A DNA stretch of 63,247 bases, taken from the NCBI RefSeq assembly GCF_001194135.2, contig NC_068990.1, positions 9,608,094-9,671,340 of the forward strand, written 5' to 3'. The notes under the pieces are model-generated. The model was given only the letters and a program-made list of their open reading frames with translations, had not been told where the DNA came from and searched no databases. This document shows positions 23,375 through 62,480 of this stretch, in pieces. This stretch comes from Octopus bimaculoides (lineage: Eukaryota). Numbering within the stretch: position 1 is the stretch's first letter; every line of letters starts with the position of its first letter. The position numbers and the translations under genes are program-made.

Positions 23375-23417
<43 letters not shown>

Positions 23418-25356: not shown

Positions 25357-27600
25357 GTAAGTACAGATCTCCCCATTAATGTAATCCAGGAAATTTACTA
25401 GTTTATCTTTGTATCAATATCAACTCCCCAATTCCGCTTTTAATTCTTTTAACTACTTTTGAAGTGTGTACGTATTGCGCTTTAGTTCTCGAAATACAAA
25501 CCAGTGAGGTTGCTAGAAAAAGCAACAAGTAAATCTCCTTCAAATCTCCCTGTATCGTTTTAAGACAGGTAAGTACCCATAAGGTGATGGTATGTTAGGT
25601 ACTCCGTCCTATAAAGCTGAGATGGTATCAGCTGGAATGGTTTTGATGGTAGACCAATAAGGTTTCTTCTGCGATGAAGAAAATATAAACAATACGGATT
25701 TCGCGAGATTAACCTCAGCAACAGGAATATGTCAATTGGGCAATGGAATGAATGTTCACCCCACCGACAAATCGTATTTTTTTCTATTTGGAACAAAAAA
25801 TATACATTAGATATTCAAATCAATGCTCAAATGATGATTAAAATGACTTAAATAATTTAACTAATTAAATGTATGTGTGTATGTATGAATATATATATAT
25901 ATATATANNNNNNNNNNNNNNNNNNNNNNNNNNNNNNNNNNNNNNNNNNNNNNNNNNNNNNNNNNNNNNNNNNNNNNNNNNNNNATATATATGTATGTAT
26001 GTATGTATGTATGTGTGTGTGTGCGTGTGTGTTACTGATTCATTTCGAATAGCAATGTCAACTATGCATACATTAAAATTAAAAATATAATTTTCAACTA
26101 CCATCGTTATTTTTCTTTTAGCATTAGCTCTCCTCATCTTTAAATTTAAACTATGATTCCAGCAAAGTATATACAATACACAGTAATATTTTCTTTTGTC
26201 GAAATATTGAATCTCTCTCTCTCTTAATGTCCATAATACGTCTTCTATAATGTTATGTTCTCTGTTGACTGACTGTCTTCTGTCAAGCACCAGTGCTCTT
26301 GCTTTGAAAGAATTTAATGAAAGTCGTGATGTCGCACTCGACATCGGCAAACTGTCGATCATGTTTGTCATGCGAATAACCTATGAAAACCGAATGCTTA
26401 TCAGCTCCCCAACCTCTCATTTCTTGGGTCGGTATCTTCCTACTAATATTGATGGAACTATTCCTTACCTTCATTCTACCAAACCCAGCATACTCTATGC
26501 ATACTCTCTTCCTTCTATGCATCAATAGTTTACATGTCGTCATCAACAACATCCACTCTCACATAGCTTACACTAACATTCAACTCTGTATGATTGAATC
26601 ACATTCTCAACACTACACGCTAAAAGCAGAGACCCTAGATGTATCCTTGAATGGGAATATGCCAAACATATTTTTTCAACACAATGAAAATACAGAACTT
26701 TTTCATATGCAAAACAATAATCATCACACCGCATATAATTGCATGTAGTATTTAGGTGGAATCTTCAAAGTCGCTCCAATTGCCGGATCTTACTGTCACC
26801 GAGATTAACTCCTGGCAAAATAACTTCTTTGCCAGAGCTATAGCTGCTTCTTGAGACTAGCAAACTCTGTTTAGGGTTAAAAGATAAATGAGCTTCCAAG
26901 TTTCATTGATATTGTAAACTACAAAACTGATGTCTACGATGAAATAGTGTCCTCACATTTAGGTCTGTGCTGAGTTCGCTGCTCATTCGGTCCTCCAATA
27001 TAGCAGGAAGGCCTCCTGGCTCCTCTTACTGCATTTTGTAAAACCTTTTCTAAAGGTATCTGTTTCTCGGAGCTAGCTGAAGTCATGCTACTCTGTTCTA
27101 TCACCCAGTGTCAGTCCAACACACCGAATCCTGCTCTAAGCTCTACGTATAGTTCTTCCCTCCCACAGTGTAGGCTTCTGGAATATTTTCTTGCTTTCTT
27201 CCTGGAATTACGAAGATTCTAAAAGAGTATTAATAACATAGATGAATATCATCAAGAATTGTGGTATTCATTGAACCCGTTCTAAGTGTTTCAAGCCATC
27301 TGCTATCGTCACATATATTTCCTCATAGAACGGGACTTTGTTCCACGCAGTTTCCAGCATGCTAACTATTAGTGCTTTGAGATTCACAGATCAGTTTAAT
27401 AGTTTCCTTTGGGAATAGTCTGCATTTGAAATTGTACTAAATGCTAAAATGGAAAACATGCATTTTAATTTAAGAGATATAACAGAGATTGAACGGAAGC
27501 ATTTGAATAACCGATTAGTACTGCCGCCAGGGAGAAAAAATCATCCAGTGAAGGGAATAGCCCTTTGGTTCAGATCAGATTGAAATTATCTTTTATCTTT

Positions 27601-27980
27601 CATACTTTATTTGTTTCAATTATTAGGCAACGACCACAGTGGAACACCACCTTGAAGAATTTATATTCTTAAATATCAACCCTTGAACTTGTTTTGTAAA
27701 ACCTGGTACTTATCCTAGCGGTCGCTTTTGAAGAACCACTCGGTTACGTTGACGTAAACACATTAGCACCGGTTATCAAGCGGTTTTGGAGTACAAACAC
27801 AGTCACAAACAAACACGCGCGCACACACATGCACACACACATATCCGACGGGCTTTCAGCTTTCGTATACCAAATCCATTCACAAGGCTCTGGTCAGCCC
27901 GAGGCTATAGTAGAAGACTCTTGCCACGGTGCCTCGCAGTGGGACTGAACTCCGAACCATGTGGTTGGTTAGTAAGCTTA
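27601..27980 (-). mobile_element. SINE family B, near full length
   Basis: CGACGGGCTTTCAG..ACCAAATCCATTCACAAGGC..CCCGAGGCTATAGTAGAAGAC..GCAGTGGGACTGAAC..CCATGTGGTTGG. Confidence 0.9.
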
Positions 27981-32091: not shown

Positions 32092-33800
32092 AATACAAGG
32101 AAACAAGCTCCTCATATATAGTCAAATGAAACATAGTTTAGAAAAGAGAATATAAATTTAGCATAAAGATTTATGGTGGTAAGCATTGAAAGTTTGGTTA
32201 ATATAAAATTCAATTTCTTCAATATTATATTGTCTCTGGAGATGAATATTCTCCTCCCGCCCAATATATTTCTTAAGCTATTTATATCTTATTTTATTAA
32301 TAACATACAAACATAACTTTTGAATCAGCATAGTCCGAAGTCAAAGGGTCTATTTTAATTTCCGTTCTGTCTTTCTGTCCCGTCAAGGGACCCATATTGT
32401 ATGTTAGTAGCTCACAATAGCAGTTATTTGATTAAATGCGAATTTTAAAATTTGTAAAGTAGAATTGTTTGCAATGAAAATATAAACATTAAATTTAAAA
32501 CTAAACAAAAGATGAAATAATTGAAAAAATGAAACACATGAAAAAGTTTTGAAAATTTCAAAAGGGATATTTCGGAGAATTTTAATCATGTGATCATAGT
32601 CAAAACAGATTTTTGTATAATTTATTTTGCGTATGCATTTTGTTGGAAAATATGTAAATCCATATATGATAGTTCGGAATATAATCTGTGAGTGTAAATG
32701 ACAGATGTCCATGTAAATAATTTTAGCGTTCAAAAAAAAAATATATATATTGAACCAAAGTAAAAAAAAAAAGAACAACAAATGCAAAAAAGTCTGTATA
32801 CAAAGAATCTACATTCATGTTTTTTATCATTCATTTCTATGTTTATATATAATAAGTTTAGAGAGACACTCATGAATTCGTGTATAATTTACAAAGAGTT
32901 ATGGGAATAATATTTCTACATTTCGTGAGTAAAATGAAGATTCTATAATGCCTCAAATTGTATCATATATTTATTTACTTTTGAGTTAAATGAAGACTGC
33001 CAAGACTATATGAGAGCTTGACACACGAACACATGCACATATATGTGTGTATATGTGATATGTGGGCGTGTGCGAAGAAGTGTTAATATGTCTAAATATA
33101 TGTATATATATATGCATGTGTTTATGAGTGAATGTAGGTATATATAGTCGCAATTTGCTACTGGACGATTTTCGTCTACTATTGAAAGTATTTCCCAATT
33201 TCTGTCCGGCTCTAAGTTGTACTATCTTCTCAGTACGGATACCGCAGTTAGAGTTTCCATGATGTGTCTGCTTTACGTATGATATACAGTTTGCTATTTT
33301 AGATTAATGCAATCTCTGTTGCACATAACGAATGCATAAATACATACATAAACACACATCTATACATATATGTATTCATACATGTGCACATGCATATATA
33401 CATACATGCATCTATATATGGATGCATGTATGTGTGTATATATATATATCTATATGTATATATATATATATAATTTTTGAGTTGGACGTCCGAGAGTGTC
33501 AAATTTCTCGGAAGGCACGAGTGGTTGAAAGGATTGCGACAGTTCAGGAATGGTTGGAAGTAATATGAACGATGATGTTATGAGAGTGAAGCAACACAGC
33601 AAGATGAATGCACTTATATAATCATTGAAAATATTTCCAGCGGTACATTTCTGGAGGTGAAGCTGAAAATAATCTTGTTTGTGTTGTTGTTTAAAAAGAT
33701 AGGAATTCAAACATTTTTAACTATTCAATAATCTAACCTTGATGGGTGAATGCGTTTTGTTTTTGGGAAATTAGTCTTTTAATATAAACAAACAAATATA

Positions 33801-33992
33801 GGCGCTTGAGTGGATGCGTGGTAAGTAGTTTGCTTAACAGCCACATTGTTCCGAGTTTAGTCCCACTGCGTGGTACCTTGGGAAATTGTTTTCTACTATA
33901 GCCTCGGGCCGATCAGAGCCTTGTGAGTGGATTTGGTAGACGGAAACTGAAAGAAGCCCGTCGTATATATATATATATATATATATATATAT
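33801..33992 (+). mobile_element. SINE family B 5' half running into its internal (TA)n tract and a gap
   Basis: GGCGCTTGAGTGGATGCGTGGTAAGTAG..AGTCCCACTGCGTGG..GGATTTGGTAGACGGAAACTGAAAGAAGCCCGTCGTATATAT. Confidence 0.92.
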
Positions 33993-37033: not shown

Positions 37034-37267
37034 GGTTGTGGTGTGTCAACGAGTACAGGCAGGGTCTGATGATTAGCTCGATTGAAGGCGACGTATATAA
37101 TCACTCAGCGACATTAGTCTGTGACTATTTAAGGTGAAAAGATCAAGCTAAAAAGCTAGTTCTAAAATATCTTCGAACGGAACAGCCATGTCGGAGTGCC
37201 TACGAACATTGCTTATATATTAAATACATACAAACATACACACACACACATGCACACAACACACATA

Positions 37268-37840
37268 TAGTAAAGTCTATTTGCAAATACATTGTGGCAG
37301 TCCTACGTAGGATGATGTTACTACATTTTAGACCCAGGAAACCATCTTTTCCAGCTGGCTACCAACACGTGATCTTTTTCCGTATACTGTGAGCGAGGGA
37401 GTTTATTGTTCCCTTTCTAGTTTTAACGATACCTGTAAACTAATGGTTTCTGAGTTACTTCTCCTTCTGGGTACAGGACAATCACCAGCTAGAGATGGCA
37501 GCCACACGACCTTCCTCGCGGTATATACTTTTGAAGCAACACACAATCGCTTATCTCGTCAAGAGAAAAACAACTAGTTTTAAATCTCGGAACGAGAAAT
37601 ATTTAGCAGCATTACCGCACAATAAAATCTATTTGCCAACACAATCTGGTGTTCTTATGCAGGATGATGTTACTACTTTTTAGCCGCAGCAAAACATATT
37701 TTCCAGGTGTCTACTGACATATGGTTTGTGTCCATATACTGAGAGCAAGGGAGTTTATTTCTCCCTTTCTAGTCTTAGAGATACATGTATATCAACGGTT
37801 TCTAGGTTATTTCCCTTCCTCGGTACAGGGCAATCGTAGA
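37268..37840 (-). mobile_element. Decayed tandem (period about 352 nt) of the hammerhead-containing unit found at 43575-44145
   Basis: Minus strand AGCCAGCTGGAAAAGATGGTTTCCTGGGTCTAAAATGTAGTAACATC aligns with AGCCAGCTGGAGGAGATGTCCTCCTGGGGCTAAAAGCAACAGTAACATC; degenerate hammerhead remnants at 37432-37477 and 37784-37829. Confidence 0.85.
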
Positions 37841-39249
37841 ATTTGAAAGCAATATTTCAGTACACTATTTAAAGTTTAGGTATTTTTTCTAATAAATTTT
37901 CCGGAGAAATGCATGCAAACATCATAATCTAATCTCCTACATAATTGAATTATACACTTTCAGAATAATGAATTTTAATACTGTATGTTTGTAATGTATA
38001 CGTTAGAATAAGGAAGATGTAAAACTTTGAAGAAATATACTTAAACCGAGAATATAAATCAGTGGTCATATGCCTTCTGGAAATGTACATAATTATTGGT
38101 AAATTATATTTGAAAACAGTGTTGATGAAATAGAATTGAATGAAGACTTAAAAGTTTTAATGAAATATCAAACTGTCAGCTCTTTGCACGGCGCGAAGAA
38201 ATCATATATACAAGATTTAAATGAAACTGCAAATGCAATAACATTTTGTAGAAATTTTCAGAAGCAAACAAAACAAAACAAAACAATTCACACCAAATCA
38301 AAAATTAGGCAGCTTTATTTTTTTTTTAGATTATAAGCACCAGATTTCTACGTGAAATCATATAATTTGTTGGAGAAATTGCTTACATTGTAAAATGATA
38401 TTTTCAGAGTAAAACTGCACAAACACAAAACCCAAAAAACACATTCACATATACCTACATATGTATCCTCATAACGAGTGACCATATATAGGTGTACATA
38501 CTGATCAAAACATACATGCATTTGATAGAATTTCTTTCTTTCAATTTCATGATACAACGGGGTCTTAGAAACAGATAGTTCTCTCAGTACGTGGTATCCT
38601 TTGGTTTCAAATCCAAAGGTGGGTCGGTGTATATATGTATATATATATATATATATNNNNNNNNNNNNNNNNNNNNNNNNNNNNNNNNNNNNNNNNNNNN
38701 NNNNNNNNNNNNNNNNNNNNNNNNNNNNNNNNNNNNNNNNNNNNNNNNNNNNNNNNNNNNNNNNNNNNNNNNNNNNNNNNNNNNNNNNNNNNNNNNNNNN
38801 NNNNNNNNNNNNNNNNNNNNNNNNNNNNNNNNNNNNNNNNNNNNNNNNNNNNNNNNNNNNNNNNNNNNNNNNNNNNNNNNNNNNNNNNNNNNNNNNNNNN
38901 NNNNNNNNNNNNNNNNNNNNNNNNNNNNNNNNNNNNATATATATGCACGTCGCGTATTTCACGTGGGAGGCTATTTATCAAAAATACGATGAATATTATC
39001 TCCAACTTTGGAGCCTCAACTATCAGCCTTATTAAATAACTGGGTAATATTCAGATGAATTAACTGAGGGAGTCTTTTATTCACGATTGTAGTGATTTTC
39101 GACTGAAACTTGAATTTAGCATGCAGAGAGTTAGTAGAAACAACATGACTTGACACAATATCAATAACAACACAATCAAGGAGCAGAACGAAAACAACTG
39201 TTCAACAGGTAAACAAATTCTTTCTACCTCTAGTTATAGAAGAAACTGT

Positions 39250-40619: not shown

Positions 40620-40820
40620 TTTATTTCTTTATTCTCTACAGGGGGCTAAACATAGACGGGACAAACAAGGACAGACAAAGGGATTAAGTCAATTACATCG
40701 ACCCCGAAAGGATGAAAGGCAAAGTCGACCTTGGCGGAATTTGAGCTCAGAACGTAACGGCAGACGAAATACCGCGAAACATTCGCCCTGCGTGCTAATA
40801 ATTCTGCCAGTTCACCGCCC
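40620..40820 (-). mobile_element. SINE family A, internally deleted
   Basis: GGGCTAAACATAG..GGGACAAACAAGGACAGAC..GGATGAAAGGCAAAGTCGACCTTGGCGGAATTTGAGCTCAGAACG. Confidence 0.9.
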
Positions 40821-41595
40821 TAAATGGATGCATATATTGTCTCGTTCAAAGAGTCTATAGAGGATTTACTGACATCTTAAAACAGTTGACAAATGCTAAA
40901 CTAGAGACACTGACAAAAAAAAAACAAACTATTAATTAATTTATGAAATTACTTATAGAGGATTAAAGATATAAATGTTGCGAACTAACCAAAATCATGG
41001 AGATCAAAACAGCAATAAAATAAAATAAATACATACACAAGACACCCACCAATATATACGTGTAGATACATGCATAAATACATGATATATATGTGTGCAT
41101 GTGTGCGAGTGTGTGTGTGTGCATCATACGTGTCTTTTCTTCCCCCGTCTCTCTTTCTCTTTCGCTCTCTTTCACTTTCTCTCATATATATTCATGTACA
41201 CACGCTCATATACACAGATTTATACGCATGCATTCAAGGGCAGGCTAATATTGCGATATATGCAAATATACAGAGATGAGCGAATGAATATCATGCAAAG
41301 AAATACATAGATCACAAGCTTTTCTATTCAAACTGATTTTAGACAATGGTCATAATATTAAAAAATCGGTACATATATGCTTATATATTTTTACCCGAGC
41401 TTTCGTGCAAATATATAAAACATAAATACAATATATTTATGTTAAATGTGCGCAACTTTAAACTGTTGAAGATAATGCATTGTAACCATAATATTGCTTA
41501 TCAACTTACCATTAAATCATTACTAATACAATTATATTAGAGAATTGTCTTGTTGTTAAGGGAAACCTGTATTTCTTCATCAATATCTTGACTTA

Positions 41596-41730
41596 TAGGC
41601 GGCGAGCTGGCAGAATCGTTAGCAAGTCGAGCGTCTGTCTTTACGTTCTGAGTTCAAATTCCGCCGATCTAGTCGACTGGCTTCCTCCCACAAAATTTAG
41701 GGCCTTGTGCCAAGAGTAGAAAAGAATATC
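41596..41730 (+). mobile_element. SINE family A with internal deletions
   Basis: GGCGGCGAGCTGGCAGAATCGTTAGCA..TTCTGAGTTCAAATTCCGCCGA..GCCTTGTGCCAAGAGTAGAAAAGA. Confidence 0.85.
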
Positions 41731-42439
41731 TTAACTGCTAGGAGCAGTATTTAATTTTCATCAACTATTTCAAGATCCTCTTACGCGCAGAGACATCACT
41801 GAACTCTATCATCTTCATAAAACTTAGCTGCGCACAGTATTTGTGTCTAGACTCTATGTCGCTAGAAAGTGAATTCCAAACGTTCTCTACTTACTGAGGA
41901 GGTAAGTCGAATGCATTAATTTAGAATTAGAAGAGGAAAGCTAGTATTTTGAACATATTAGATGGAAATAGATCCCTTCAGAACATACTTAATGTATATT
42001 TTCATTACAACCCAATACATCACATCTGTATTATGACGAGTTTCCTATGACACTTCCAATTATCAGGGCATGTACAATATATTTTAGTGTCACATGTATG
42101 TCTGTAACAGTTTGTAACGGGTGTCAAGTAAGCTATGAAAGTCATAACGAACTCATTTTGCCGAATTGCTGAGTTGATGAGTGTCATGCTATTTGCGTAT
42201 TTGTAATTAAAATTTATGTTGATATTATTAGAAGCAATATTAGTATTGCACCAGGTGAATAATTTCTCATTAAGGGAACATAGTTTGAATCCATTACCGC
42301 CACATTATTAAGTTAACTTCCAGAAATATTAGGAAAGGTGTTATTAACGTTATTATTAATACGAAATGAGGATTTATTACTAGTGTTTCATGAAACATAA
42401 TCAAACCTTGTGTTAATTTCTGAGTAAATAGAAGCATTA

Positions 42440-42635
42440 ATATTGGTTTCAAAGTTTGGCCCAAAGCCAGCAATTTCAGTGAAGGGCTAAGTCAACCACG
42501 TCAATCCCAGTGTTTAGCTGGTACTTATTTTATTTATTCTGAAACGAACAAAGTCAATTTCGGTGGAATTTGAAGTCAGAAAGTTAAGATAGACGAAATG
42601 CCTCCAATCACTTGGTTTGGAGTGCTAACAATTGT
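42440..42635 (-). mobile_element. SINE family A, degenerate
   Basis: ATTGGTTTCAAAGTTTGGC..CCCAGTG..CTGGTACTTATTT..GGTGGAATTTGAAGTCAGAA..TGCTAACAATT. Confidence 0.65.
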
Positions 42636-42908
42636 GAACGAGAGCGGGAACGAAAGTAACATTATCCAACGAACTACGTAGAATATAAGTAATTTCATAT
42701 TAGTAGAGACGCCTCAGTCAATCTAGGTTCTTGAAGCGCGTAAGAATGTCATGAGCCCACATGAAAAGCTGTGGGTGTATAGTTGACAAAATATATTGAA
42801 CATTAAAGAGGTATCACCAGTAGCATCATTGGGTCACACGATCAAATCCATTTTAAAAATATGCATATTAAATGCGATACAGAAAGAGTGACTGCAATTG
42901 TGAAAATA

Positions 42909-43475
42909 CAAGGGGGCACCCAAAAGAAACCGGAATTTTGTAATATTATTTTATTCAATTAGTTTTACATGTTTAGACATATATCGCCTTCAAAGTATTC
43001 TCCATCGGTCCAGACGCGTTTTCCACTGTTCGAAGCCGTGTTGGAACTCTTGCAAAGAGATGCCTTTTAACGTCTCCGGCGTTTTCTACTTCACCTCTAC
43101 CACATCTGTAAATGCCGTAGCACCAGCTTTCGTCACCAGCTGATCCGGACCTTCAAAAAAAGGTCCGGATCAGCTCCCAACTGTTCTTTCAAAATACGAC
43201 AGGCATTCAGCCATGACTGCTTTTGATCTTCCGTGAGCAAACGAGGCACAGATTTTGCTGCAACTCTTTTCATTTGCAATTCCTCGCAGAAACTTCGTTG
43301 GCAGAAACTCCAGTACATACCAATCATATCAACAAGTTCGTCAATCGTTCAGTGACGGTACTCCAAGATCAGTTCATAAATTTTCAGCATGTTTTCATTC
43401 GTTAGAAAAGTGTACGGTGACCCTGACCGAGGTTGGTTCTCAAGCGAAAAGTAACCATCGCTAAAGCGTGTAAAC
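42909..43475 (-). mobile_element. Internally deleted, 5'-truncated mariner
   Basis: TA plus TIR-like CAAGGGGGCACCCAAAAGAAACCGGAATT at 42907-42937; minus strand ENQPRSGSP..TIDELVDMIG..MKRVAAKSVPRLLTEDQKQ..DPDLF joined to a C-terminus ending GEYFEGD. Confidence 0.88.
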
Positions 43476-43630
43476 AGCAAGTAAATTTGTGTTTTACACA
43501 TGGCAGTGGCCTTGTAAGCTATTTAAAGTGTGACAACATTAAAGTGTGGCAATCTTATATCTACTTTTCCAGTGAAAGTAGATATAAGATTGCCAAGATT
43601 TTATCTCTCTCATCAAAGATCAGTGGCTAT

Positions 43631-43675
43631 CGGACGCTGACGAAGGGAAATAACCCTGAAACCCGGGTCCGTTCG
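43631..43675 (+). ncRNA. Type I hammerhead ribozyme, copy 1
   Basis: Helix I CGGACG/CGTTCG, core CTGACGA, helix II AGGG-AAATAA-CCCT, GAAA, palindromic helix III ACCCGGGT, GTC cleavage triplet (predicted cut after 43669). Confidence 0.88.
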
Positions 43676-43976
43676 TGCTACAGATCTTGATGGGAGGGAT
43701 AACTTCCCTTGGCAAACAGGACACAGTAGTGTGTCGATAAGCCAGCTGGAGGAGATGTCCTCCTGGGGCTAAAAGCAACAGTAACATCCACCCCTAGGGG
43801 TCAGCCACACTTAAGTGGCAATATACAACACTTTATCGTGCAGTTACTGTTAATACTTCATTTAGAGAATTAACATTGCTTGTTTTCACCTCTTCGATAT
43901 CAGTGAAGAATTTCACTGGAAAAGTAGATATAAAGTTGCCAAGATTTTATCTCTCTCATCAAAGATCAGTGGCTAT

Positions 43977-44021
43977 CGGACGCTGACGAAGGGAAATAAC
44001 CCTGAAACCCGGGTCCGTTCG
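43977..44021 (+). ncRNA. Type I hammerhead ribozyme, copy 2 (identical)
   Basis: Same 45-nt motif as copy 1; predicted cut after 44015. Confidence 0.88.
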
Positions 44022-44457
44022 TGCTACAGATCTTGATGGGAGGGATAACTTCCCTTGGCAAACAGGACACAGTAGTATGTCGATAAGCCAGCTGGAGGAG
44101 ATGTCCTCCTGGGGCTAAAAGCAACAGTAACATCCACCCCTAGGGNNNNNNNNNNNNNNNNNNNNNNNNNNNNNNNNNNNNNNNNNNNNNNNNNNNNNNN
44201 NNNNNNNNNNNNNNNNNNNNNNNNNNNNNNNNNNNNNNNNNNNNNNNNNNNNNNNNNNNNNNNNNNNNNNNNNNNNNNNNNNNNNNNNNNNNNNNNNNNN
44301 NNNNNNNNNNNNNNNNNNNNNNNNNNNNNNNNNNNNNNNNNNNNNNNNNNNNNNNNNNNNNNNNNNNNNNNNNNNNNNNNNNNNNNNNNNNNNNNNNNNN
44401 NNNNNNNNNNNNNNNNNNNNNNNNNNNNNNNNNNNNNNNNNNNNNNNNNNNNNNNNN

Positions 44458-44524
<67 letters not shown>

Positions 44525-45469
44525 ATATATATGTATGTATGTATGTATATATATATGTATACACATCTATATGTGCATGTATGTGTAAATATATAAATAT
44601 ATATACATATACATACATATATATATCCTCTAATGACATTACTTTTTATGTATATGCAATCAATATTTGAGTGGGAAGAAGTACTACCATGTGTGCGTGA
44701 ATGTAATTCTTTGTGCGTGTATATATATATGTAAATACGTATGTATATGATTCTATGTGCGCGTGAGTGAACTTCTGTCTTCGTGTGTGCGTATACATAT
44801 ATATCACTCTAATTTTCCCCACCTATTTGATGTCGATAAACTTTCTTTTCTTTTGGAAATCTCCTGTTTCCGTTCTTATTCTTGAATTTTTTCTGCTCTG
44901 TTTTGTCCTTTACGTTCTTTATCTAAATACCTCTTGTTGTTCATAAGCATGTGTGAGCATGTGTATACATCTATAGGTGCACCTATATGTTTGAGCGAGT
45001 GTATATATGCGTATACATTATGCGTATTTATATATATATATTGATATACATGTGTATAAATGTAGATATATCTATTGACAAATATCCGTATAGTTATTCG
45101 TATGCCCACAAGTGTGTCAGAAGCGCAAACTTTATATAGCTATATTATATTGTTTGCAATAATGCATATTCATGTACAAGCATTGCCAGATACATATGTG
45201 CCTGATGCATCTGTGTGTGAGCATGTTTATGGTTATGTTCGTACATGTGGAAGCAATTTCATCTATGCCAGTTTTTTTTACACAATGTTTATGAAATTAA
45301 ATCCTCTAAGTTTTTGACCATATTACCATGACGTGAAGCTCCAAGAATGTTCAATATATTTTGCTAAATATAGATTTTATATATAAAATGTAGTTAGTTT
45401 GTTAAGTGCATTGGCACGCAACTAAGATCGGGAGTCAAATGCTGCTTCTGATTACAATATACATCCATA

Positions 45470-45779
45470 TTCTTTTATTCTTTTATTCTTTTATTCTTTT
45501 ATTCTTTTATTCTTTTATTCTTTTATTCTTTTATTCTTTTACTTGTCTCAGGCATTTGACTTGGGCCACGCTGGAGCACCAGCTTGAAGGATTTTTTTCA
45601 CTCGAATATGGACCGTAATCCATATTCGTTCTTTGCCGAACCGCTAAGTTACGGTAACGTAAACACACCAACGACGTTTGTCAAGCGGTAATAGCGGTAG
45701 AAAGACAAACACAACGACAAACACACATAAATACATACACAAACACACAGACACACAGACACACACACACAGACACACA

Positions 45780-45828
<49 letters not shown>

Positions 45829-45990
45829 CGGACTTTCTTAAGTTTCCGACTACCAAACCCACTCAAAAGGATTTGGTTGACATGAGGACATAGAAGAACA
45901 TACATTCGTCAAAGTGCCATGCATTAGGACTAAACGTGGACTTATGTGGTTGTGAAGTAAGCTTCTTACCACATGGTCACGCCTTTGCCT
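45470..45990 (-). mobile_element. SINE family B, full length, with internal (CA)n and (TTTTATTC)n tail
   Basis: Octamer tail 45470-45541, GCTGGAGCACC, TTTGCCGAACCGCTAAGTTACGG, TTTCCGACTACCAAACCCACTCA, ATGTGGTTG..CTTACCAC. Confidence 0.9.
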
Positions 45991-46006
45991 ATATATGTGT
46001 GTGTGT

Positions 46007-46043
<37 letters not shown>

Positions 46044-46619
46044 TGTGTCTGTCTGTCTGTCTGTGTGTTTGTGTGTGTTTGTGTGTGTCTGTGTGTGTGT
46101 GTGTCTATGTGTGTGAAAATAAAATAACAGGAGTTTAAGAGTGAATGAATTTACACACTGACCACTTATATTGATGGCTGGACTTTGGTTAATCCCGTTA
46201 CGGACAACAGGTGGCTGGTCTTTATAACATATCAGTAAGTATATTAATGTAATTATTTTATGGGCATGTTATTTGGATAAATATTAATTAGTGCTATTTA
46301 CGATATCTTAAGTAGAATTCTACATACATACATAATACATATATTATATATATACATAATACATGTATTATATATATACATATATATTTATATATATCTA
46401 TATACATACATTCAAATATGCACATATACATATATACGTGCGTACGTACATACACACATATATACATGTGTGTGTGTGTGTATGTATATAGACATCTATA
46501 GAGTTCAACGATTCAAATGCTTGAGAGCTATTTTATTCTAATCCTAACTCATGGAAAATAGTTGTGTAGGGACTGGTTATATCAAAAGTGACTACGAAAT
46601 TTTGTATATATTTAATAAT

Positions 46620-47275
46620 TCTGGAATGTAGTTTAGGAAGTCCATATTATCTCTGATAAAAGTAGGAACCAATTCGCATTCTGATTTTAATATGATGCCC
46701 AACAAAATTGCTTAATCGTCGAATGCTTGGAATTCATCCTTCAATTGAGCATGATTTTAAATCAGGTTGTCTGGGAGTCTCTGCATATTATGCATGGCGA
46801 TCCTTTAAGCTATTATAGATTTCTTTAGTTTTATGAGTCTTCTGTTGTCTATAAATTTTGCTCGCTTTCGTCTCCAAATTTGTTTGATAATCCGACTCTT
46901 TTTCTTTTTATTAGAATTTGATATTTTCCGTTAATTTACCAGTTTTGTACATTGCTTAGTTATCTGCATTGGATAACCAAGTTTTGGTGGAAATATTGAT
47001 TATTCAATTGTTCTAAATGCATTTCCTTGTAATGAGTCTTGTCCATTATTACAATGGCTCCTCCTTTGTCAGTTTCTTTAATGACTATAGTGAATCTTTC
47101 TGTAGACATTGCTATGTTTTTTGTTCTTTATTTGCAATATTTGATCTTATACAATTAGCTGGAATGTTCAACTTTATCGATGTTTTCAGAAACATTATAT
47201 ATTCCTCTAAGTGTTTATTCCTGTTCATCGGAGGTTTTATCATGTACTTTTTTTATAATGTGATGGATCATCATA

Positions 47276-47331
<56 letters not shown>

Positions 47332-47560
47332 GTTTTCTTGTAGAATTTCTTTAGGCGAATTATTCCACAAAATTTCTAAGTATGTTTTATATGATTAGCT
47401 GTGTCAGGTTTTGTTGCTGGTGTGAAATTAATTCCATATTGTAAAAAAAATTTTTTTTCTCTACACAATATTTTGCTGTTTTGAATTTAGTAGTTTTGGA
47501 TCAATTCTTTAACTTCAGCCCTGAATCGGTGTATCGTAAATGATTGCAACTTATTGTAAT
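46620..47560 (-). mobile_element. Decayed Penelope-like element RT region, interrupted by (TCTT)n at about 47276-47330
   Basis: Minus-strand pieces LQYGINFTP..FCGIIRLKKF, IVIKETDKGGAIVIMDKTHYKEMHLEQLNNQYFHQNL and ETKASKIYRQQKTHK match PLE motifs GLxFxP, ADKGxxxVIMD and FYGLPKIHK. Confidence 0.8.
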
Positions 47561-50500
47561 CTGTTAAAAATCACTAAAGAAATCTAAAGGGATTTTTTCT
47601 TTAACTAGAATAAGGGATGTATTTATCGTTTGTTCGCTGTCGGGATTTTGGTGTGTATATGTTGCGTAGGAGTTTGCTTTCACTGAGTCTCTAGAACAAC
47701 ATCCATTACGAAGAATGCTGTTGACTGATGGCACGTTTGCAAACCTGCTTGAAACGTTGGTATTCGAAGAGAGAAAGAAAGATAGAGAGAGGGGGAGGGA
47801 GTATTTTTCCATGAATAATAATATAGTAAATGAAGAGCCGATTGAGAATGTTGTGGTTGACGAAGAACCTCCAAGTGACTACACGTAAAGCAAAGATTTT
47901 TTGGTACAGAACGTATGATTTCTAGATGCTTTGATATCTTTCCTGTGCTTAGTATTATGTATTTATTTCAAGTTCATTTTTTTAACCGTATCGAAGTCAA
48001 TTATTAAATTGCTTCTATTCTATTCAACTGAAATGTACTATTGTATGTCACTGACATTTGCGCCTCAGTATAAAATCGTTATCGCATTACAGGTAAGTAC
48101 AATGTTCATATGTTTAAAAATGTGCTAACATCTGTAAGATGAAGAATCTTTTGCACTATAGTATAAAAAGAGTGTGTTATTCATATTTACAATGGTAGAC
48201 GTTATACGAACTCCCAAAATAACATAGATTTCGGGCGAGGCAGTCTGTAATTCATATGTTCTCAAAATGACAAATATAAACTCGAAGTGTTATTTATATA
48301 CAACATTGGCGCATAAAAATTCAGACGTAATAAATTCTTGCTCCAAAGAGGTTTGCTGGTTATTCCAAATAACTAGAATATTTTAACTGATTCCATCAGT
48401 ATCACACGGCATTGTATAATTCATTTGAACGTTAGGATACGTTTGAGGTAAAGATTATTTTTGAGGCAATTATTATAAACTATTGAATCATTTCCAATTT
48501 ATAATTGGTACCGAGTTTCTAGACACTGTATTGATGCAGAATTTTAAATCGCTTCATTTATCTTTTCAGCTCTAGCGTAAAATGAAACCATTCATTTATA
48601 TTGATTATTACACACCAATTACATATATACATTGTGTATATATGAAAATCTAATTCAACTCGTAAATATACTTCATTCGTAAGTTAAACCAAAGTATTTG
48701 CTTTATCGTAATCATCAAGTAAGTCTGATACCCATCTCCGATTGCAGTGTGATACGTATTTTCCAGTGAAATAAACCTCTGGATAGTCTTTAAGACTATT
48801 ACAGATAGCTTTTCAAATTTCAGTTGAATCGGCTATTTAAATTAAACAACACGCTCGCTCACCATTTCAAGAACATAGATACCACTATGATTTTGACAAC
48901 CTATTTGTTACCCTAAAGTTCAGTCCATCTACACACTATGTATTTCTGAAAATGATATTACGACTTTTTTTGTCTGTGATATTTATTGCATCTATAATGA
49001 TATGATTATGCATGTATATCTGGATGGCTTTGCTTCAATCAACATACATTTGATTATTGATTTTGCAGTTGGGGATAAATGACCCAGTGTAAGGTCTTAT
49101 ATATATATATATATAATATAGTGTCTTGATGAAATTCCACCAAATGAAATGAGATATGTAATTAACGGATAAAATCTCCTTGTATGGTGTTTGAAACATA
49201 GTAACAATATCATCAGATGATCAAAACCTTTAAGCAATATAAAAGATACTCTAAATTTGGATGGATGCAACACATTCCTTCAGTGTTGTTGCTCTGAGAC
49301 GAAGGAAAATAGAAGATATCTAATGAAGCTTTTGTAAGAAAACATTTGACACACAACATGACCTTTGAAAATACAGCAGTCATACTCTCTGTTATTTGCT
49401 CTGATCATATATGTAACGACATAATTTTAGTTCTGGTAAATTTGGAAAAGTATACTATACTAAACGAACCTTGCACATTCAACGAACAGAAACTAAGAAT
49501 AAAGCCCCTGCATGATTGAGTACGCTTTGTTACAGGTAAATCAACTGAAAGAAATCCATAATTTAACACCGAATAGTGGTTATTATATGCAACATAGAAG
49601 AGAGTTTACCATAAGCACATAATTCTAGGAAATATGACATCGATAGTGATAAGCGTTGTGTTATTGTAATTAGAGTTACTTTAGCGTAATCATTATTTTG
49701 ATGCAGATATATAAAAAGATATTGAAGAGTGCTTTTAATTTCATTGTGCTTATGTCGATTATTGTAAATATTTCTGGAAGCATTTAATAACTTGAGTATC
49801 TATCCAATTATAAAAAGATCAAATAGAAGGAGGTTGAAATCTAACAGCGCATCTATAATCGGATGTGATACGTTTAACATTAGAAAGACACTGCATTGAA
49901 ATAAAAAGAAAGAAGTACAGGGAAAATATTGTGTTAGAATGTGGAGACGACTTATTAGACATCGGATATAACGATTTCTGGTTCGGGAATAAGAGACGGT
50001 CGAATTTGTTAAACAATATGTTTGAAAAGACGAAAAATTGATTGAACTTCAAGAAATGTAAACGGAAAAGACGGTGCGCTAAGAACGGGAAGTTGCACTA
50101 TTATAGGATTTGTATTCGTTTCGTGTTAACAATGTAGAATTTCTGAAAGGTAAATGCAGAATTAGAAAGTAAAACTGTCAATAAGAAATTATTGTAAATT
50201 TTCTTGAAGAAAAACAGACAAATCAATCTAATGTAGTTCGAAGATAGATGATGACGCAGACAGTAACTGTAATTTGAGCATTGCGGATTACGTTGCGATA
50301 CGTATCTATATAACGAAATTGTATTTATTGCTATCGTGTTAGATACATAAGAATAGGAAAGATGATTTTACACGCTCGTTTACAATTTATACTGCTCGAG
50401 GAGTTATAAGGAAGCAAATAAAAGCAGGTGTACTTCACATGAATTACAGAAAACAAAAAGTAAAAATAAAACTAAAGCCGTGTCATTTTAGCAACAAATA

Positions 50501-54229: not shown

Positions 54230-55110
54230 AAATTGAAATTGTGTCGAGACACCAAACATCTTTTTTTTTATTTTTTAGCTAATTTGAAGGTGCTGAATCT
54301 GAAAATGACCTCACTTTTTCTTGGCCAGCTACCGTCTATGCTGTACAGAAATGCTTCATTTTTGAAAAAAAAAGAAGCATTTTCTTCATCTGTCTTCTGT
54401 ATATTTGATATTGAATGATGGCAATATTTCTCAAAGTAAAATCGTAGAAACCTCTCACTTCATATTTGGTCTGCTTATTGGGAAATACTATTTTTGCAAT
54501 AACAATCAGCCCCTAAGTCTTTAAAAATAACCAAGACCAACAAGAATTATCATGAAATCATTAAATAAACTAACAGTAGGAATAAAACTTTCGTGAACAT
54601 AAGAACTATGGTAAAAATTTTCTTTCTTGATTGTCAGTCATGTTCAATGTTATTTAAATCCCTTTTGATACACCAGAAGTAGTCAGCCCTCATTCGTTTG
54701 TCCCACCGTCCCCGGTAGCGCTCTTCCATTGTTTTGATATCCTGATGGAATCGTTCTCCTTGTTCATCACTCATATCGCCGCAAGTATCCGGAAATTTAT
54801 CTAGATGGCTATGTAAAAAAATAACCTTAATACTCATATTAGCGCCTATGTCCTGTAGAATTTTCAACAGCTTTTCCACTAACTCCTTGTATGTTTCGGC
54901 CCGGTGATTGCCTAAGAAGTTTTTCACCACGTCCAGAAACAATGTCCAAGCGCGTAATTCCAAGTCATTCATTGAATTAACAAATTCATCACCCTTAATG
55001 AGTTTCCTAATAACAGGACCATCAAATACTCCTGCTTTGAGTTTTTCGGTGCTAAGTCCTGGAAATGATTTACATATATACTCAAAACATTTACTTTCTT
55101 TAGTATTAAA
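54230..55110 (-). mobile_element. 3' part of a DNA transposon; transposase C-terminus (54634-55107), most like CMC/Chapaev3
   Basis: Open reading CFEYICKSFPGLSTEKLKAGVFDGPVIRKLIK..MNDLELRAW..VVKNFLGN..MSIKVIFLHSHLDKFP..GDMSDEQGERFHQDIKTMEERYRGRW..ADYFWCIKRD. The transposase call is firm; the family label is from memory. Confidence 0.8.
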
Positions 55111-55559
55111 AAAATGACTCAGATGATCGTGAGGCTACCACAGTAAGTTCCTCTTACATTCTCGGATATCACTCCAGTTGATAATTACATTGGATTATCA
55201 GAGTGATTCGTTTATCATTTTCCATTTATTTTAATCTTTATTAACTCATCAACACTTTAAACAAATCAATCAATAATATTATTCACATTACATTGTTTAT
55301 GGCTTCTTGTCAACATTTCGCTAACCTGTCCATAATTTGACGGTAGAAATCCATGATTTTGTCGGCAGGTATTGACTCATAGTATTCATCAATCTACGTT
55401 TCAGAAAATGCACTCTGAATTACCCGTGTCTATTCCCCAACATTTTCTCTCTCCCTGTCTCACTTTGAAAAATCAGGATATATTCAGGAGTCTACTCAAA
55501 TAAAAAAAAAAACACTTAAATTACTCCATTCTCAAAAAGGGCAACCTCTCTTGTCCCAC

Positions 55560-59741: not shown

Positions 59742-60028
59742 ATGCTGGAGCACCGCCTTATTTTTTGTAAGCCTAGTACTTATTCTATCGGGTCTTTTGC
59801 CGAACTGCTAAGTTACAGGGACATAAACACACGAACATCGGTTGTCATGCGATAGTGGGCTGTGGACAAACATACACACGCAAATACACATGCAACTACC
59901 AAATCCATTTACAAGGATTTGGTCGGCCCGAGGCTACCGTAGAAGACATTTTGTGACACGCAGTGGTACTGAACCCGGAGCCCTGTGGTTGGGAAACAAA
60001 TTTCTTACCAGACAGTCACTCGTGCGAC
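59742..60028 (-). mobile_element. SINE family B
   Basis: TGCTGGAGCACCGCC..AAGCCTAGTACTTATTCTATCGG..TTGGTCGGCCCGAGGCTA..GCAGTGGTACTGAACCCGG. Confidence 0.92.
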
Positions 60029-61211
60029 TATATATACAGAAATTCAACATATTCTCCCCTCTCTGTGGCGAGAATCGAAGTGGGAAATTCCTTATGTTTT
60101 GAATTAAAATAAATGTATGTATGTATATATATATATATATATATNNNNNNNNNNNNNNNNNNNNNNNNNNNNNNNNNNNNNNNNNNNNNNNNNNNNNNNN
60201 NNNNNNNNNNNNNNNNNNNNNNNNNNNNNNNNNNNNNNNNNNNNNNNNNNNNNNNNNNNNNNNNNNNNNNNNNNNNNNNNNNNNNNNNNNNNNNNNNNNN
60301 NNNNNNNNNNNNNNNNNNNNNNNNNNNNNNNNNNNNNNNNNNNNNNNNNNNNNNNNNNNNNNNNNNNNNNNNNNNNNNNNNNNNNNNNNNNNNNNNNNNN
60401 NNNNNNNNNNNNNNNNNNNNNNNNNNNNNNNNNNNNNNNNNNNNNNNNNNNNNNNNNNNNNNNNNNNATATATATATATATATAGATAGATATTCATACA
60501 TACTGGTGCGTTTGAGCGTTTCAGTGCAAAGTAGTAATCGAAAAGGTAAAGTATGTTAACTGAAAAACTTCGCATACTGTTACGCCGATTCTCCTGTAAC
60601 TGGTCACCACACGGTGCTGACCACCTGTCTGAGGATCAATTGAGTTAAACCCGAAGGAAAACTTTGTGGCAAGGGGGTGTAAGAATGTGTATGTATATTG
60701 TAAGAATACATCTGTATATATGCGCACGACTGTGTGCGCGACTTTTTGCATTCTGCTGTAGGATCATTTACATGTTGAGAATGATATATCACTTTATGTC
60801 ATGTCCCAAAATAACAATGTATTTTTGACTATAGCATCAGACTATGTGATATTATTTCAAAATATCAGGACATATATGACAGTTGGAAGCTCGAGATACA
60901 TCACCTTGTGTTATTTGAAACAAGAATTATCCAAATAGAATGGCTATATTAGAAGCAAAATATATATTTGACATTTTCCCCACACCTTAGAATTGCCACA
61001 CAAAGGATCATCTATTTCATTTCTCTCTTTAAAATGATTTTACCTACAAAATTATTTCCATATTATCACCAAGTCCTGGAATATATTATATTAGTGACAT
61101 TAGCGTCAAGTCATCGGCGGTCTCTCAGATTTAAGAATTTAGTTACCCTTTTGTACATAGGAGCTACTCCTGTATGTGTGCATGCATGAATATGTATTAT
61201 CTATATATCTA

Positions 61212-61748
61212 CAGGGGTTGGACAAAAAATGGAAACACAGCATCATAGCATCATAATTTTGAATTATCTATAAAACTGTCAAAAGCTTGTTCATCTTTAT
61301 GTTTTTTGGATTTATTATTAGTGTTGCTTAATATGTTTTGCTAAAATCGCTGTTTCTTTTCAGATATCATCAGAAAATAGTAATTAAAATCCATTAAAAT
61401 GACAGATCTGCCGGACTTTCAAAGAGGTCAAATTGTTGGTGCTCGTATAGCAGGTGCTAGCGTAATGAAAACAGCCGAAATGTTTGGTGTATCAAGAAGT
61501 ACTATCTCGAAGGTAATGACAACCTTTGAGAAAGAGGGAAAAAACCTCGTCATCGAAACAAAACTCCGGATGAAAACAAAAACTTTCAGATAGGGACCAT
61601 CGTACGCTTACGCGAATTGTTAGAAAGGGTCACAAATGTACAGCACCCAAAATTACTGCAGAGCTTAATGACCAACTCGAGAACCCAGTCTCAACAAAAA
61701 TTGTTTCCCGAGAGCTGCACAAAGCTGGATTTCACGGCAGGGCTGCAT
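61212..61748 (+). mobile_element. Tc1-like element, 5' part (TIR plus transposase DNA-binding domain, one frameshift, one stop)
   Basis: TA followed by CAGGGGTTGGACAAAAAATGGAAAC TIR; MTDLPDFQRGQIVGARIAGASVMKTAEMFGVSRSTISKVMTTFEKEG then LSDRDHRTLTRIVRKGHKCTAPKITAELN..VS..LHKAGFHGRA. Confidence 0.92.
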
Positions 61749-62264: not shown

Positions 62265-62480
62265 GTGTGTGTGATTGTCCACCACCAACGCTTGACAATT
62301 GGTGTTGGTGTGTTTATGTCATCATAACTTAGTGGTTCGGCAAAATGACGTATGTAATAAGTATAGTACTTAACAAAAATTAAGTACTGGGGTCGATTTC
62401 TTCGATTAATAAAATTCTTCAAGATGATTCTCCAGTATACCCGCAGACTGAACCTAATAAAATTTAAAAAATAAAGACAG
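62265..62480 (+). mobile_element. SINE family B 3' half
   Basis: ACGCTTGACAATTGGTGTTGGTGTGTTTATGTC..TAACTTAGTGGTTCGGCAAAA..AAGTACTGGGGTCGATTT. Confidence 0.85.

What the first reader, a model, noticed from the sequence alone, without database searches (positions are those of the whole stretch)
43575..44145. Tandem 346-nt unit with two intact minimal type I hammerhead ribozymes (retrozyme-like circRNA source)
Seen: two identical 45-nt motifs (43631-43675, 43977-44021) fold into a complete hammerhead. Helix I is CGGACG/CGTTCG (6 bp, one G-U), the core is CUGACGA, helix II is AGGG/CCCU, then GAAA and a GUC cleavage triplet. Helix III is the palindrome ACCCGGGU, too short to close in a monomer. 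Known: minimal type I hammerheads with palindromic helix III occur in Penelope pLTRs and in metazoan non-LTR retrozymes (newt satellite 2, schistosome Sm-alpha, cricket pDo500), and are thought to cleave as dimers formed by tandem copies. Inference: a + strand transcript would release a non-coding 346-nt monomer (43670-44015) able to circularise and be re-inserted by a helper RT. I do not know of this family being described in cephalopods.
Basis: partly seen in the sequence, partly recalled or inferred. Interest (0 to 1): 0.92.

Follow-up and report, generated by a model that had tools for sequence, protein, structure and literature searches.

The report
Octopus tandem repeat with hammerhead ribozymes
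A 346-base non-coding repeat, present at least 1.65 times head to tail, carries a complete self-cleaving hammerhead ribozyme in each copy; it fits the "non-LTR retrozyme" class of small mobile elements already known in many animals, here in an octopus-type genome, so it is real but an ordinary member of a known kind.

Summary
Copies at 43575-43799 and 43921-44145 are 98.7% identical with period 346, and an assembly gap cuts the array. Each copy holds a hammerhead with every consensus core nucleotide, a 6-bp helix I, a 4-bp helix II and a palindromic helix III. My generic descriptor finds only these two sites in the window, against 0.025 expected per shuffle.

Two corrections. The ribozyme is not "minimal": its geometry is that of canonical metazoan type I hammerheads, not Penelope min-HHRs. 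Rfam 15 hammerhead models do not detect it at all, and the pair at the base of helix II is A-U instead of the usual G-C.

The 415-nt two-ribozyme transcript is predicted to fold into the double hammerhead. The released 346-nt RNA is strongly structured (z = -6.55) and non-coding (43.9% GC). No RT/endonuclease ORF lies in the 2.2 kb upstream.

An older, decayed tandem array of a related family lies at 37262-37860 (-), with the same architecture, a covarying helix I and dead cores. One further copy is annotated in Octopus bimaculoides.

Best reading: a recently inserted non-LTR retrozyme, probably mobilised by Penelope-like elements. Cleavage, circles and mobilisation are inferred, not shown. 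It is a new member of a known kind, of modest interest.

The parts
43547..43577 (-). 31-nt inverted copy of unit sequence (reverse complement of the unit junction TTTCACTGGAAAAGTAGATATAAGATTGCCA). It abuts the 5' start of the array and forms a perfect 21-bp hairpin with 43575-43595 (7-nt loop).
   Evidence: (I1/I2). The exact string check shows it carries the same GA variant as copy 1. It produces the sub-threshold miRNA-like Rfam hits.
43575..43920 (+). Copy 1 of the 346-nt unit, in array register.
43921..44145 (+). Copy 2, with 225 nt visible; cut by the assembly gap 44146-44457.
   Evidence: 98.7% identity to copy 1.
43618..43686 (+). Hammerhead 1 with its extended helix I. The core motif is 43631-43675 and the predicted cleavage is between 43669 and 43670.
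43964..44032 (+). Hammerhead 2, identical to hammerhead 1. The core motif is 43977-44021 and the predicted cleavage is between 44015 and 44016.
43670..44015 (+). Predicted released monomer RNA: 346 nt, non-coding, 43.9% GC. Its two ends are brought together by the ~40-bp imperfect helix I stem.
   Evidence: MFE -121.5 kcal/mol, z = -6.55; circular fold -119.7 kcal/mol; longest stop-free frame 62 codons; GC.
44146..44457 (.). Assembly gap (312 N) hiding the 3' end of the array; followed by a (TA)n/(TG)n microsatellite.
37262..37860 (-). Older tandem array (about 1.6 units, oldA and oldB) of a related family. It has the same hammerhead architecture but dead cores (CCGAGGA, CCCAGAA), and its 3' end abuts a TG/TA microsatellite.
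   Evidence: (oldA vs oldB 72%; old vs young 54-57% over MAFFT columns, 63-69% in BLAST segments).

Best explanation
This is a recently inserted copy of a non-autonomous, non-coding retroelement of the metazoan 'non-LTR retrozyme' type, in an octopus-type genome. The proposed mechanism has four steps.

1. A + strand transcript crosses at least two units. The palindromic helix III sequences (ACCCGGGU) of neighbouring ribozymes pair. The 3' strand of helix I of the upstream ribozyme pairs with the 5' strand of helix I of the downstream one. This gives a double hammerhead that cuts after C43669 and C44015.
2. [quoted passage not shown] The long, imperfect helix I stem (~40 bp) holds the ends side by side, so a host RtcB-type tRNA ligase can close the circle.
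3. In the monomer or circle, an alternative pairing (CGGAC/GUCCG plus CUG/CGG) masks the core. This protects the circle from re-cleavage.
4. The circle is reverse-transcribed for more than one round by the RT of an autonomous element, most likely a Penelope-like element, and inserted as a partial tandem.

Shown here: the repeat, the intact ribozyme consensus, the predicted folds, the lack of coding capacity, and a second older insertion of a related family with the same layout. Inferred: transcription, cleavage, circularisation, and the identity of the helper.
For: - Repeat and motif.
- Double hammerhead: it is the minimum-free-energy fold of the natural 415-nt two-ribozyme transcript.
- Monomer masking: in the isolated 69-nt ribozyme region the active fold is -18.1 kcal/mol against -25.7 for the masking fold. 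The circular monomer keeps the masking fold.
- Released RNA: z = -6.55 against 100 dinucleotide shuffles. Only the + strand has a hammerhead.
- Non-coding: the longest stop-free frame is 62 codons. There is no Pfam domain in six frames of 41400-43700, upstream of and into copy 1; the rest of the array was left out of the pasted frames.
- GC content 43.9%.
- Family behaviour: an independent, old array (oldA/oldB 72% identical) of a related family lies 6 kb away, also as about 1.6 units. It has the same segment lengths (5-bp distal stem, 3/1-nt internal loop, 6-bp helix I, 7-nt box, 4-bp helix II, 6-nt loop 2). Helix I is changed at all six pairs yet is still 6/6 paired in oldB, while the core boxes have decayed. 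This is what neutral decay of an inserted copy should look like.
- RT-type rearrangement: a 31-nt exact inverted fragment sits at the 5' junction. Inverted 5'-truncated copies next to the upstream repeat are described for Penelope-like insertions (PMC8557442).
- Another copy elsewhere: UniRef A0A0L8IHK6 of Octopus bimaculoides matches the - strand frame at 91% identity.
- Class description and mechanism in the literature: PMC7229834, PMC7761336, PMC4209133, and bioRxiv 10.64898/2026.07.22.740005.
Against: - No Rfam 15 hammerhead model matches, even at E<=10 on a 51-nt slice.
- The pair at the base of helix II is A10.1-U11.1. G10.1-C11.1 is called highly conserved in canonical hammerheads (PMC4209133), and the effect on activity is unknown. 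There is a precedent for a weak base of helix II: axolotl HHR_Amex2 has a U-U mismatch there and is still active.
- Only two ribozyme copies are visible, and the 3' end is in a gap, so target-site duplications and the element's end cannot be read.
- No evidence of transcription or of circles is available here.
- Copy number in the genome could not be measured. A six-frame protein search found nothing beyond one octopus entry, and DNA scans of metagenome and viral collections found nothing.
- No helper RT is present in the window.
Confidence: 0.75

Rival explanations
1. The two copies are the pseudo-LTRs of a Penelope-like element, or of a deleted derivative: repeat - short internal region - repeat. 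This would be the ordinary partial-tandem product of PLE integration rather than a separate retrozyme. Any ORF would be lost or hidden in the gap.
For: - The 1.65-unit layout equals a direct repeat of at least 225 nt flanking about 120 nt, with a hammerhead in each repeat.
- An inverted fragment sits at the 5' junction, and the element adjoins a (TA)n microsatellite. Both are described for PLE insertions (PMC8557442).
- The old array has the same ~1.6-unit extent and also ends at a microsatellite.
- The 2026 preprint places vertebrate retrozymes as sisters of PLE pLTRs.
Against: - Copy 2 follows copy 1 directly with period 346, so there is no room for a 2.5-kb ORF between the ribozymes.
- The old array is fully visible, without a gap, and has no ORF.
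- No RT or GIY-YIG signal in six frames of 41400-43700.
- The ribozyme geometry is canonical type I, not the PLE min-HHR.

If retrozymes are PLE derivatives, this is a refinement of the best explanation more than a rival.
Confidence: 0.13
2. It is a local tandem duplication or satellite whose hammerhead-like motif is inactive or fortuitous. It would have no RNA processing role.
For: Rfam hammerhead models do not score it. It has the non-canonical A10.1-U11.1 pair. The monomer fold prefers an inactive pairing. The other octopus copy (P0001) implies changes in helix III and the cleavage triplet.
Against: - All 13 consensus core positions and all three helices are present.
- 0.025 generic hits are expected per window, before requiring the 8-nt palindrome.
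- The same architecture with a covarying helix I occurs in a family only ~55-69% identical.
- The double hammerhead is the MFE of the dimer transcript.
- The RNA is far more structured than shuffles.
- Two independent insertions both occur as partial tandems.
Confidence: 0.08
3. The tandem arrangement is an assembly artefact of a short-read scaffold next to a gap, so that only one copy really exists.
For: The window has 13 N-gaps, and the array ends in one of them.
Against: The copies differ at three positions and share a continuous junction sequence, 43800-43920. The related old array is also tandem and lies in gap-free sequence.
Confidence: 0.03

Closest known systems
Metazoan non-LTR retrozymes (Cervera & de la Pena 2020, PMC7229834), especially the Mytilus galloprovincialis units of 350-390 bp and the axolotl units of 331/353 nt
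   Same: Head-to-tail repeats of a few hundred bp with GC below 50% and no coding capacity. There is one type I hammerhead per unit on one strand only. Helix III is weak and palindromic, which allows a dimeric ribozyme. The monomer RNA is highly self-paired, with the ribozyme closing a long stem.
   Different: The host is a cephalopod, which I did not find described in the searchable literature. The base pair at the foot of helix II is A-U. Only 1.65 units are visible. Expression and circles are untested.
Canonical metazoan type I hammerheads of newt satellite 2, Schistosoma Sm-alpha and cave-cricket pDo500
   Same: Helix I of 6 bp followed by an internal loop, a 4-bp helix II with a 6-nt A-rich loop, and a 1-2-bp helix III with a small palindromic loop (definition in PMC4209133). 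From memory only: loop 2 AAAUAA resembles the CAAAUA of the schistosome and newt ribozymes, and the 5'-strand bulge UAU resembles their UAC.
   Different: A10.1-U11.1 instead of G-C, and C at position 7. The Rfam family built on these ribozymes is not matched. No tRNA-like part was found (ARAGORN), so there is no support for a Sm-alpha-like SINE origin.
[quoted passage not shown] 2017)
   Same: Type I topology, palindromic 15.x-16.x positions, expected action as dimers in tandem copies, and insertion features (inverted 5' fragment, microsatellite neighbourhood).
   Different: PLE min-HHRs have helix II of 7-8 bp, helix I of 4-5 bp with an ill-defined loop 1, an unpaired nucleotide before G10.1, and usually no helix III. 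They flank an RT-endonuclease ORF. None of these applies here.
Plant LTR retrozymes
   Same: Non-autonomous, ribozyme-delimited circRNA intermediates.
   Different: Plant elements use type III hammerheads, LTRs, PBS and PPT, with about 700 nt between the ribozymes and GC above 55%.

Membership tests
Metazoan non-LTR retrozyme | Type I hammerhead with intact catalytic core in each unit | tested here: met
   Sequence reading and the generic descriptor. The core matches the consensus of PMC3088659. Caveat: there is no Rfam hit.
Metazoan non-LTR retrozyme | Head-to-tail tandem repeats of about 150-450 bp | tested here: met
   Period 346, 1.65 units visible, 98.7% identity. The array is truncated by a gap.
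Metazoan non-LTR retrozyme | Low GC (<50%), non-coding | tested here: met
   GC 43.9%. The longest stop-free frame is 62 codons. No Pfam domain.
Metazoan non-LTR retrozyme | No LTR, PBS or PPT | tested here: inconclusive
   No tRNA-like sequence was found. LTR, PBS and PPT motifs were not searched for formally.
Metazoan non-LTR retrozyme | Stable, highly self-paired monomer RNA | tested here: met
   MFE -121.5 kcal/mol, z = -6.55. 56% of the bases are paired in the circular fold.
Metazoan non-LTR retrozyme | Many dispersed copies in the genome | tested here: inconclusive
   There is a second, old array in the window and one Octopus bimaculoides entry. No eukaryotic genome could be searched.
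Metazoan non-LTR retrozyme | Self-cleavage, and accumulation as linear and circular RNA | not testable with these tools
   Needs in-vitro transcription and RNA analysis. Only fold predictions are available.
Canonical metazoan type I hammerhead (PMC4209133) | Helix I of 6 bp, helix II of 4 bp, helix III of 1-2 bp capped by a 2-4-nt palindromic loop | tested here: met
   CGGACG/CGUUCG; AGGG/CCCU; A-U and C-G pairs plus the CCGG loop.
Canonical metazoan type I hammerhead (PMC4209133) | Conserved loop 1 / loop 2 nucleotides for tertiary contacts | tested here: inconclusive
   An internal loop UAU/U lies 6 bp from the core, and loop 2 is the 6-nt AAAUAA. The comparison with the schistosome and newt loops rests on memory, not on a test.
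Canonical metazoan type I hammerhead (PMC4209133) | G10.1-C11.1 pair | tested here: not met
   The pair is A10.1-U11.1. In the old copies these positions are A/A and G/A.
Rfam hammerhead families (Hammerhead_1 and relatives) | Score at or above the family gathering threshold | tested here: not met
   No hit at gathering score, nor at E<=10 on 746, 84 or 51 nt.
Penelope-like element pseudo-LTR with min-HHR | Repeats flank an RT + GIY-YIG ORF | tested here: not met
   346 nt lie between the ribozymes. No domain was found in six frames of 41400-43700. The old array is gap-free and lacks an ORF. Sequence beyond the gap was not domain-scanned.
Penelope-like element pseudo-LTR with min-HHR | min-HHR geometry: helix II of 7-8 bp, helix I of 4-5 bp, no helix III, extra nucleotide before G10.1 | tested here: not met
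   Helix II is 4 bp and helix I is 6 bp plus extension. A helix III is present (definition).

The most novel reading that the evidence does not exclude
This is a currently active retrozyme family of octopuses. Its hammerhead variant (A10.1-U11.1) escapes the Rfam models, so cephalopod genomes would hold an unannotated population of ribozyme-processed circRNAs. The 5' foldback and the recurrent 1.6-unit layout would then record a Penelope-type integration step for a circular template.
Probability: 0.35. Interest if true: 0.45.

Novelty: new member of a known kind. Interest (0 to 1): 0.32.

Why it matters
If confirmed, it extends ribozyme-delimited circRNA retroelements to cephalopods. It also shows that standard Rfam annotation misses at least one hammerhead variant, so counts such as the 235 Hammerhead_1 hits in the giant squid would be underestimates. 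The young and old arrays side by side are a small natural experiment: the architecture and the helix I pairing are kept between families, while the core decays after insertion. The exact inverted fragment at the 5' junction is a concrete clue to how such elements integrate. None of this changes the current picture of retrozymes; it adds a taxon and a variant.

Tried and rejected
- Rfam cmscan was run four ways. There was no hammerhead hit. The only hits were sub-threshold miRNA-like matches caused by the 21-bp foldback hairpin, and these were rejected as an artefact.
- TRF does not report the repeat, because fewer than two copies are visible.
- Exact look-up of the - strand 55-aa frame and of P0001 in public assemblies found nothing on record.
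- A protein search with the - strand frame gave one hit, from Octopus bimaculoides. A concatenated query of ten of the eleven other stop-free frames gave nothing.
- DNA pattern scans of the metagenome and viral collections gave 0 hits. No eukaryotic genome collection is available, so copy number and core-versus-body conservation across copies could not be measured.
- The first Pfam attempt, with DNA references, failed because of stop codons. It was redone for the upstream region with X-masked six-frame translations and gave nothing. The region after the gap (44458-49400) was not rescanned in six frames, so only its stop-free frames of at least 65 codons were inspected by eye.
- ARAGORN found no tRNA-like part. 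By eye, weak pol III A-box and B-box resemblances overlap the helix I strands, but I judged them too poor to count.
- MAFFT misaligns the 3' half of the old ribozymes. I therefore checked a manual structural alignment by script instead of using count of structure pairs.
- A search for the missing 5' part of the interrupted mariner beyond the gap, which could have defined the insertion site, found only unrelated repeats.
- Two papers were not held (PMC2941103 and PMC5785218).

Full report
**1. What is in the sequence**

Reading 43300-44500 shows a direct repeat: 43575-43799 recurs at 43921-44145, with start-to-start spacing 346. The copies differ at three positions (43588, 43589, 43731), giving 98.7% identity. 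The second copy runs into a 312-N assembly gap (44146-44457), which is followed by a (TA)n/(TG)n microsatellite. So 1.65 units are visible and the real copy number is unknown. TRF does not list the repeat because fewer than two copies are present.

**2. The hammerhead**

Both copies contain the identical string CGGACG CUGACGA AGGG AAAUAA CCCU GAA ACCCGGGU C | CGUUCG, at 43631-43675 and 43977-44021.

- Every position of the strict core consensus used by Perreault et al. 2011 is met (C3 U4 G5 A6 N7 G8 A9 G12 A13 A14 A15.1 U16.1 H17; PMC3088659).
- Helix I is 6 bp with one G-U pair, and helix II is 4 bp closed by a 6-nt loop.
- Helix III is the 8-nt palindrome ACCCGGGU. In a single ribozyme it can form only A-U and C-G pairs around a CCGG tetraloop.
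- Cleavage is predicted after C43669 and C44015, which would release 43670-44015 (346 nt).
- The specific pattern never occurs in 100 shuffles.
- A generic descriptor of my own, which does not even require helix III, finds only these two sites on both strands. It yields 0.025 hits per window in 200 resamples.

**3. Two caveats on the ribozyme**

First, Rfam 15 does not recognise it. There is no hit at gathering score over the whole window. There is also no hammerhead family at E<=10 on 746, 84 or 51 nt, where matches of about 8 bits were being listed.

Second, the pair at the foot of helix II is A10.1-U11.1, whereas G10.1-C11.1 is described as highly conserved (PMC4209133). A weak base of helix II has a precedent in an active retrozyme ribozyme: axolotl HHR_Amex2 has a U-U mismatch there (PMC7229834). 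Even so, the effect here is unknown.

**4. It is not a 'minimal' hammerhead**

Helix I continues beyond 6 bp. After an internal loop (UAU on the 5' strand, U on the 3' strand) come GUGGC/GCUAC, GAUC/GAUC and further pairs, forming an imperfect stem of about 40 bp.

Cervera & de la Pena 2014 define canonical metazoan type I hammerheads by three features:
- helix I of 6 bp and helix II of 4 bp that interact through loop nucleotides;
- helix III of 1-2 bp;
- a 2-4-nt palindromic loop capping helix III.

They define Penelope min-HHRs by a helix II of 7-8 bp, a helix I of 4-5 bp with an ill-defined loop 1, an extra nucleotide before G10.1, and no helix III.

The motif here fits the first description and fails the second. 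Whether the loop nucleotides are those that make the tertiary contacts I can judge only from memory: AAAUAA here against CAAAUA, and UAU against UAC, in the schistosome and newt ribozymes. That is a lead, not a test.

**5. Predicted behaviour of the RNA**

The natural 415-nt transcript from the first to the second ribozyme has the double hammerhead as its minimum-free-energy structure. In that fold:
- the two palindromes pair with each other (8 bp);
- the 3' strand of helix I of ribozyme 1 pairs with the 5' strand of helix I of ribozyme 2, enclosing the unit body;
- the outer strands pair with each other.

In the isolated 69-nt ribozyme region, the active fold (-18.1 kcal/mol) loses to an alternative (-25.7) in which CGGAC/GUCCG and CUG/CGG mask the core and the cleavage site. 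The circular monomer keeps this masked fold.

This is the behaviour proposed for viroid and newt ribozymes: cleavage in multimers and protection of the monomer (PMC4209133).

However, 'most invertebrate' retrozyme ribozymes with a 2-bp helix III plus tetraloop cleave well as monomers. Dependence on the dimer is therefore a prediction, not a given.

The released 346-nt RNA folds at -121.5 kcal/mol, with z = -6.55 against shuffles. The - strand gives z = -4.53. Its two ends sit next to each other at the three-way junction, which suits ligation. Only the + strand carries a hammerhead.

**6. Coding capacity and neighbours**

- The unit has no stop-free frame over 62 codons and is 43.9% GC.
- Six-frame translations of 41400-43700 match no Pfam family.
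- No ORF of 110 aa or more in the window looks like a reverse transcriptase or an endonuclease.
- Directly upstream, on the - strand, lies a decayed mariner-like transposase N-terminus (43133-43546). It is similar to another fragment in the window, and a third copy carries Pfam Transposase_1. The array appears to interrupt this mariner.
- ARAGORN finds no tRNA-like sequence.

**7. The 5' junction**

The 31 nt at 43547-43577 are the exact reverse complement of the unit junction sequence TTTCACTGGAAAAGTAGATATAAGATTGCCA. They include 10 nt that lie upstream of the point where copy 1 begins, and they carry the GA variant of copy 1. With 43575-43595 they form a perfect 21-bp hairpin, which explains the sub-threshold miRNA-family hits.

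Inverted 5'-truncated copies next to the upstream repeat are described for Penelope-like insertions, as is a bias for microsatellite targets (PMC8557442). I read the foldback as a trace of reverse-transcriptase template switching. This is inference.

**8. A second, older array**

BLASTN of the unit against the window finds related sequence at 37262-37860 on the - strand. It is again a partial tandem of about 1.6 units (oldA and oldB, 72% identical to each other). Identity to the young unit is 54-57% over MAFFT columns and 63-69% in BLAST segments. It ends at a TG/TA microsatellite.

A manual structural alignment, verified by script, shows the same segment lengths throughout:
- a 5-bp distal stem;
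- a 3/1-nt internal loop (UGY/U);
- a 6-bp helix I;
- a 7-nt box;
- a 4-bp helix II and a 6-nt loop 2;
- GAA, helix III and H17.

Helix I differs from the young family at all six pairs (CCUGUA/UACAGG against CGGACG/CGUUCG), yet it is 6/6 paired in oldB and 5/6 in oldA. The CUGANGA box has decayed to CCGAGGA and CCCAGAA.

So the ribozyme architecture was under selection in the ancestors of both families, and inserted copies decay neutrally. The partial-tandem layout is a property of the family, not of this one locus.

**9. Relatives elsewhere**

- A protein-level search with the - strand frame that spans the ribozyme found one entry: UniRef A0A0L8IHK6, 'uncharacterized protein' of Octopus bimaculoides, at 91% identity.
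- Its sequence implies changes in helix III and the cleavage triplet in that copy.
- Exact look-ups in public assemblies, a concatenated query of ten of the eleven other stop-free frames, and DNA scans of the metagenome and viral collections found nothing more.
- No eukaryotic genome could be searched, so copy number is unknown.

**10. Comparison with what is known**

[quoted passage not shown] They were named non-LTR retrozymes, and circRNAs from them were shown in a coral, a mussel (350-390-bp units) and the axolotl (331/353 nt). An RtcB-type tRNA ligase is the likely circularising enzyme, and Penelope-like elements are the likely helpers (PMC7229834; PMC7761336).

A 2026 preprint places vertebrate retrozymes as sisters of PLE pseudo-LTRs and reports that most families have few repeat units. 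The giant squid genome paper lists 235 Rfam Hammerhead_1 hits (PMC6962438).

I found no paper that describes retrozymes in cephalopods.

The element meets the sequence-level criteria of the class that were formally tested. The functional criteria cannot be tested here. It fails the G10.1-C11.1 feature and the Rfam threshold, and it fails the defining features of a PLE pseudo-LTR.

**11. Verdict**

This is a real, well-formed, recently inserted hammerhead-bearing tandem element. It is best filed as a new (cephalopod) member of the known non-LTR retrozyme class, probably dependent on Penelope-like elements.

Its modest points of interest are the Rfam-invisible A10.1-U11.1 variant, the exact 5' foldback, and the young/old pair of arrays.

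- Confidence in the class assignment at sequence level: about 0.75.
- Interest: 0.32.

Noticed in passing
window 43133-43546 (-): Decayed mariner-like transposase N-terminus, with stop codons, directly abutting the hammerhead array, which seems to interrupt it. It resembles the fragment at 7294-7545 (-) (BLASTP E=1e-10). Pfam does not recognise it.
   Followed up: partly
window 16405-17085 (+) and 7294-7545 (-): Further mariner remnants. 16852-17085 matches Pfam Transposase_1 (PF01359, E=6e-7).
   Followed up: partly
window 61384-61590 (+): Helix-turn-helix frame (Pfam HTH_23/HTH_28), probably the N-terminus of a Tc1-like transposase.
   Followed up: no
window 42436-42636, with copies at 5301-5501, 10451-10664, 14017-14173, 23192-23386, 24362-24546 and 40713-40806: A short interspersed repeat family of about 200 bp (61-71% identity between copies), unrelated to the hammerhead unit.
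   Followed up: no
window 45519-46002, with copies at 27589-27979, 33788-33964, 59744-60035 and 62153-62344: A second interspersed repeat family, next to AC/TG microsatellites.
   Followed up: no
window 43538-43604: The perfect 21-bp foldback hairpin gives sub-threshold matches to several microRNA precursor families in Rfam (best MIR848, 30.5 bits against a gathering score of 90). This is a by-product of the inverted fragment, not a miRNA gene.
   Followed up: yes
whole window: There are 13 N-gaps (10-859 N), most flanked by TA/TG microsatellites. GC is about 19-39%. There are no tRNA genes and no Rfam family at gathering score. The window is a repeat-rich stretch of a short-read scaffold with no evident host gene.
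   Followed up: partly
window 54637-55134 (-): A stop-free frame of 166 codons, the longest non-repetitive one in the window, with no Pfam match. It may be a transposon-derived protein fragment.
   Followed up: no
window 43693-43710 and 37749-37770 (-): A small hairpin just downstream of the ribozyme (AGGGA-UAACU-UCCCU in the young unit; GGGAG..CUCCC in the old units) is kept in both families. Other blocks conserved between families are GCCAGCTGGA, CTAAAA and AGTAACATC. Their function is unknown.
   Followed up: no
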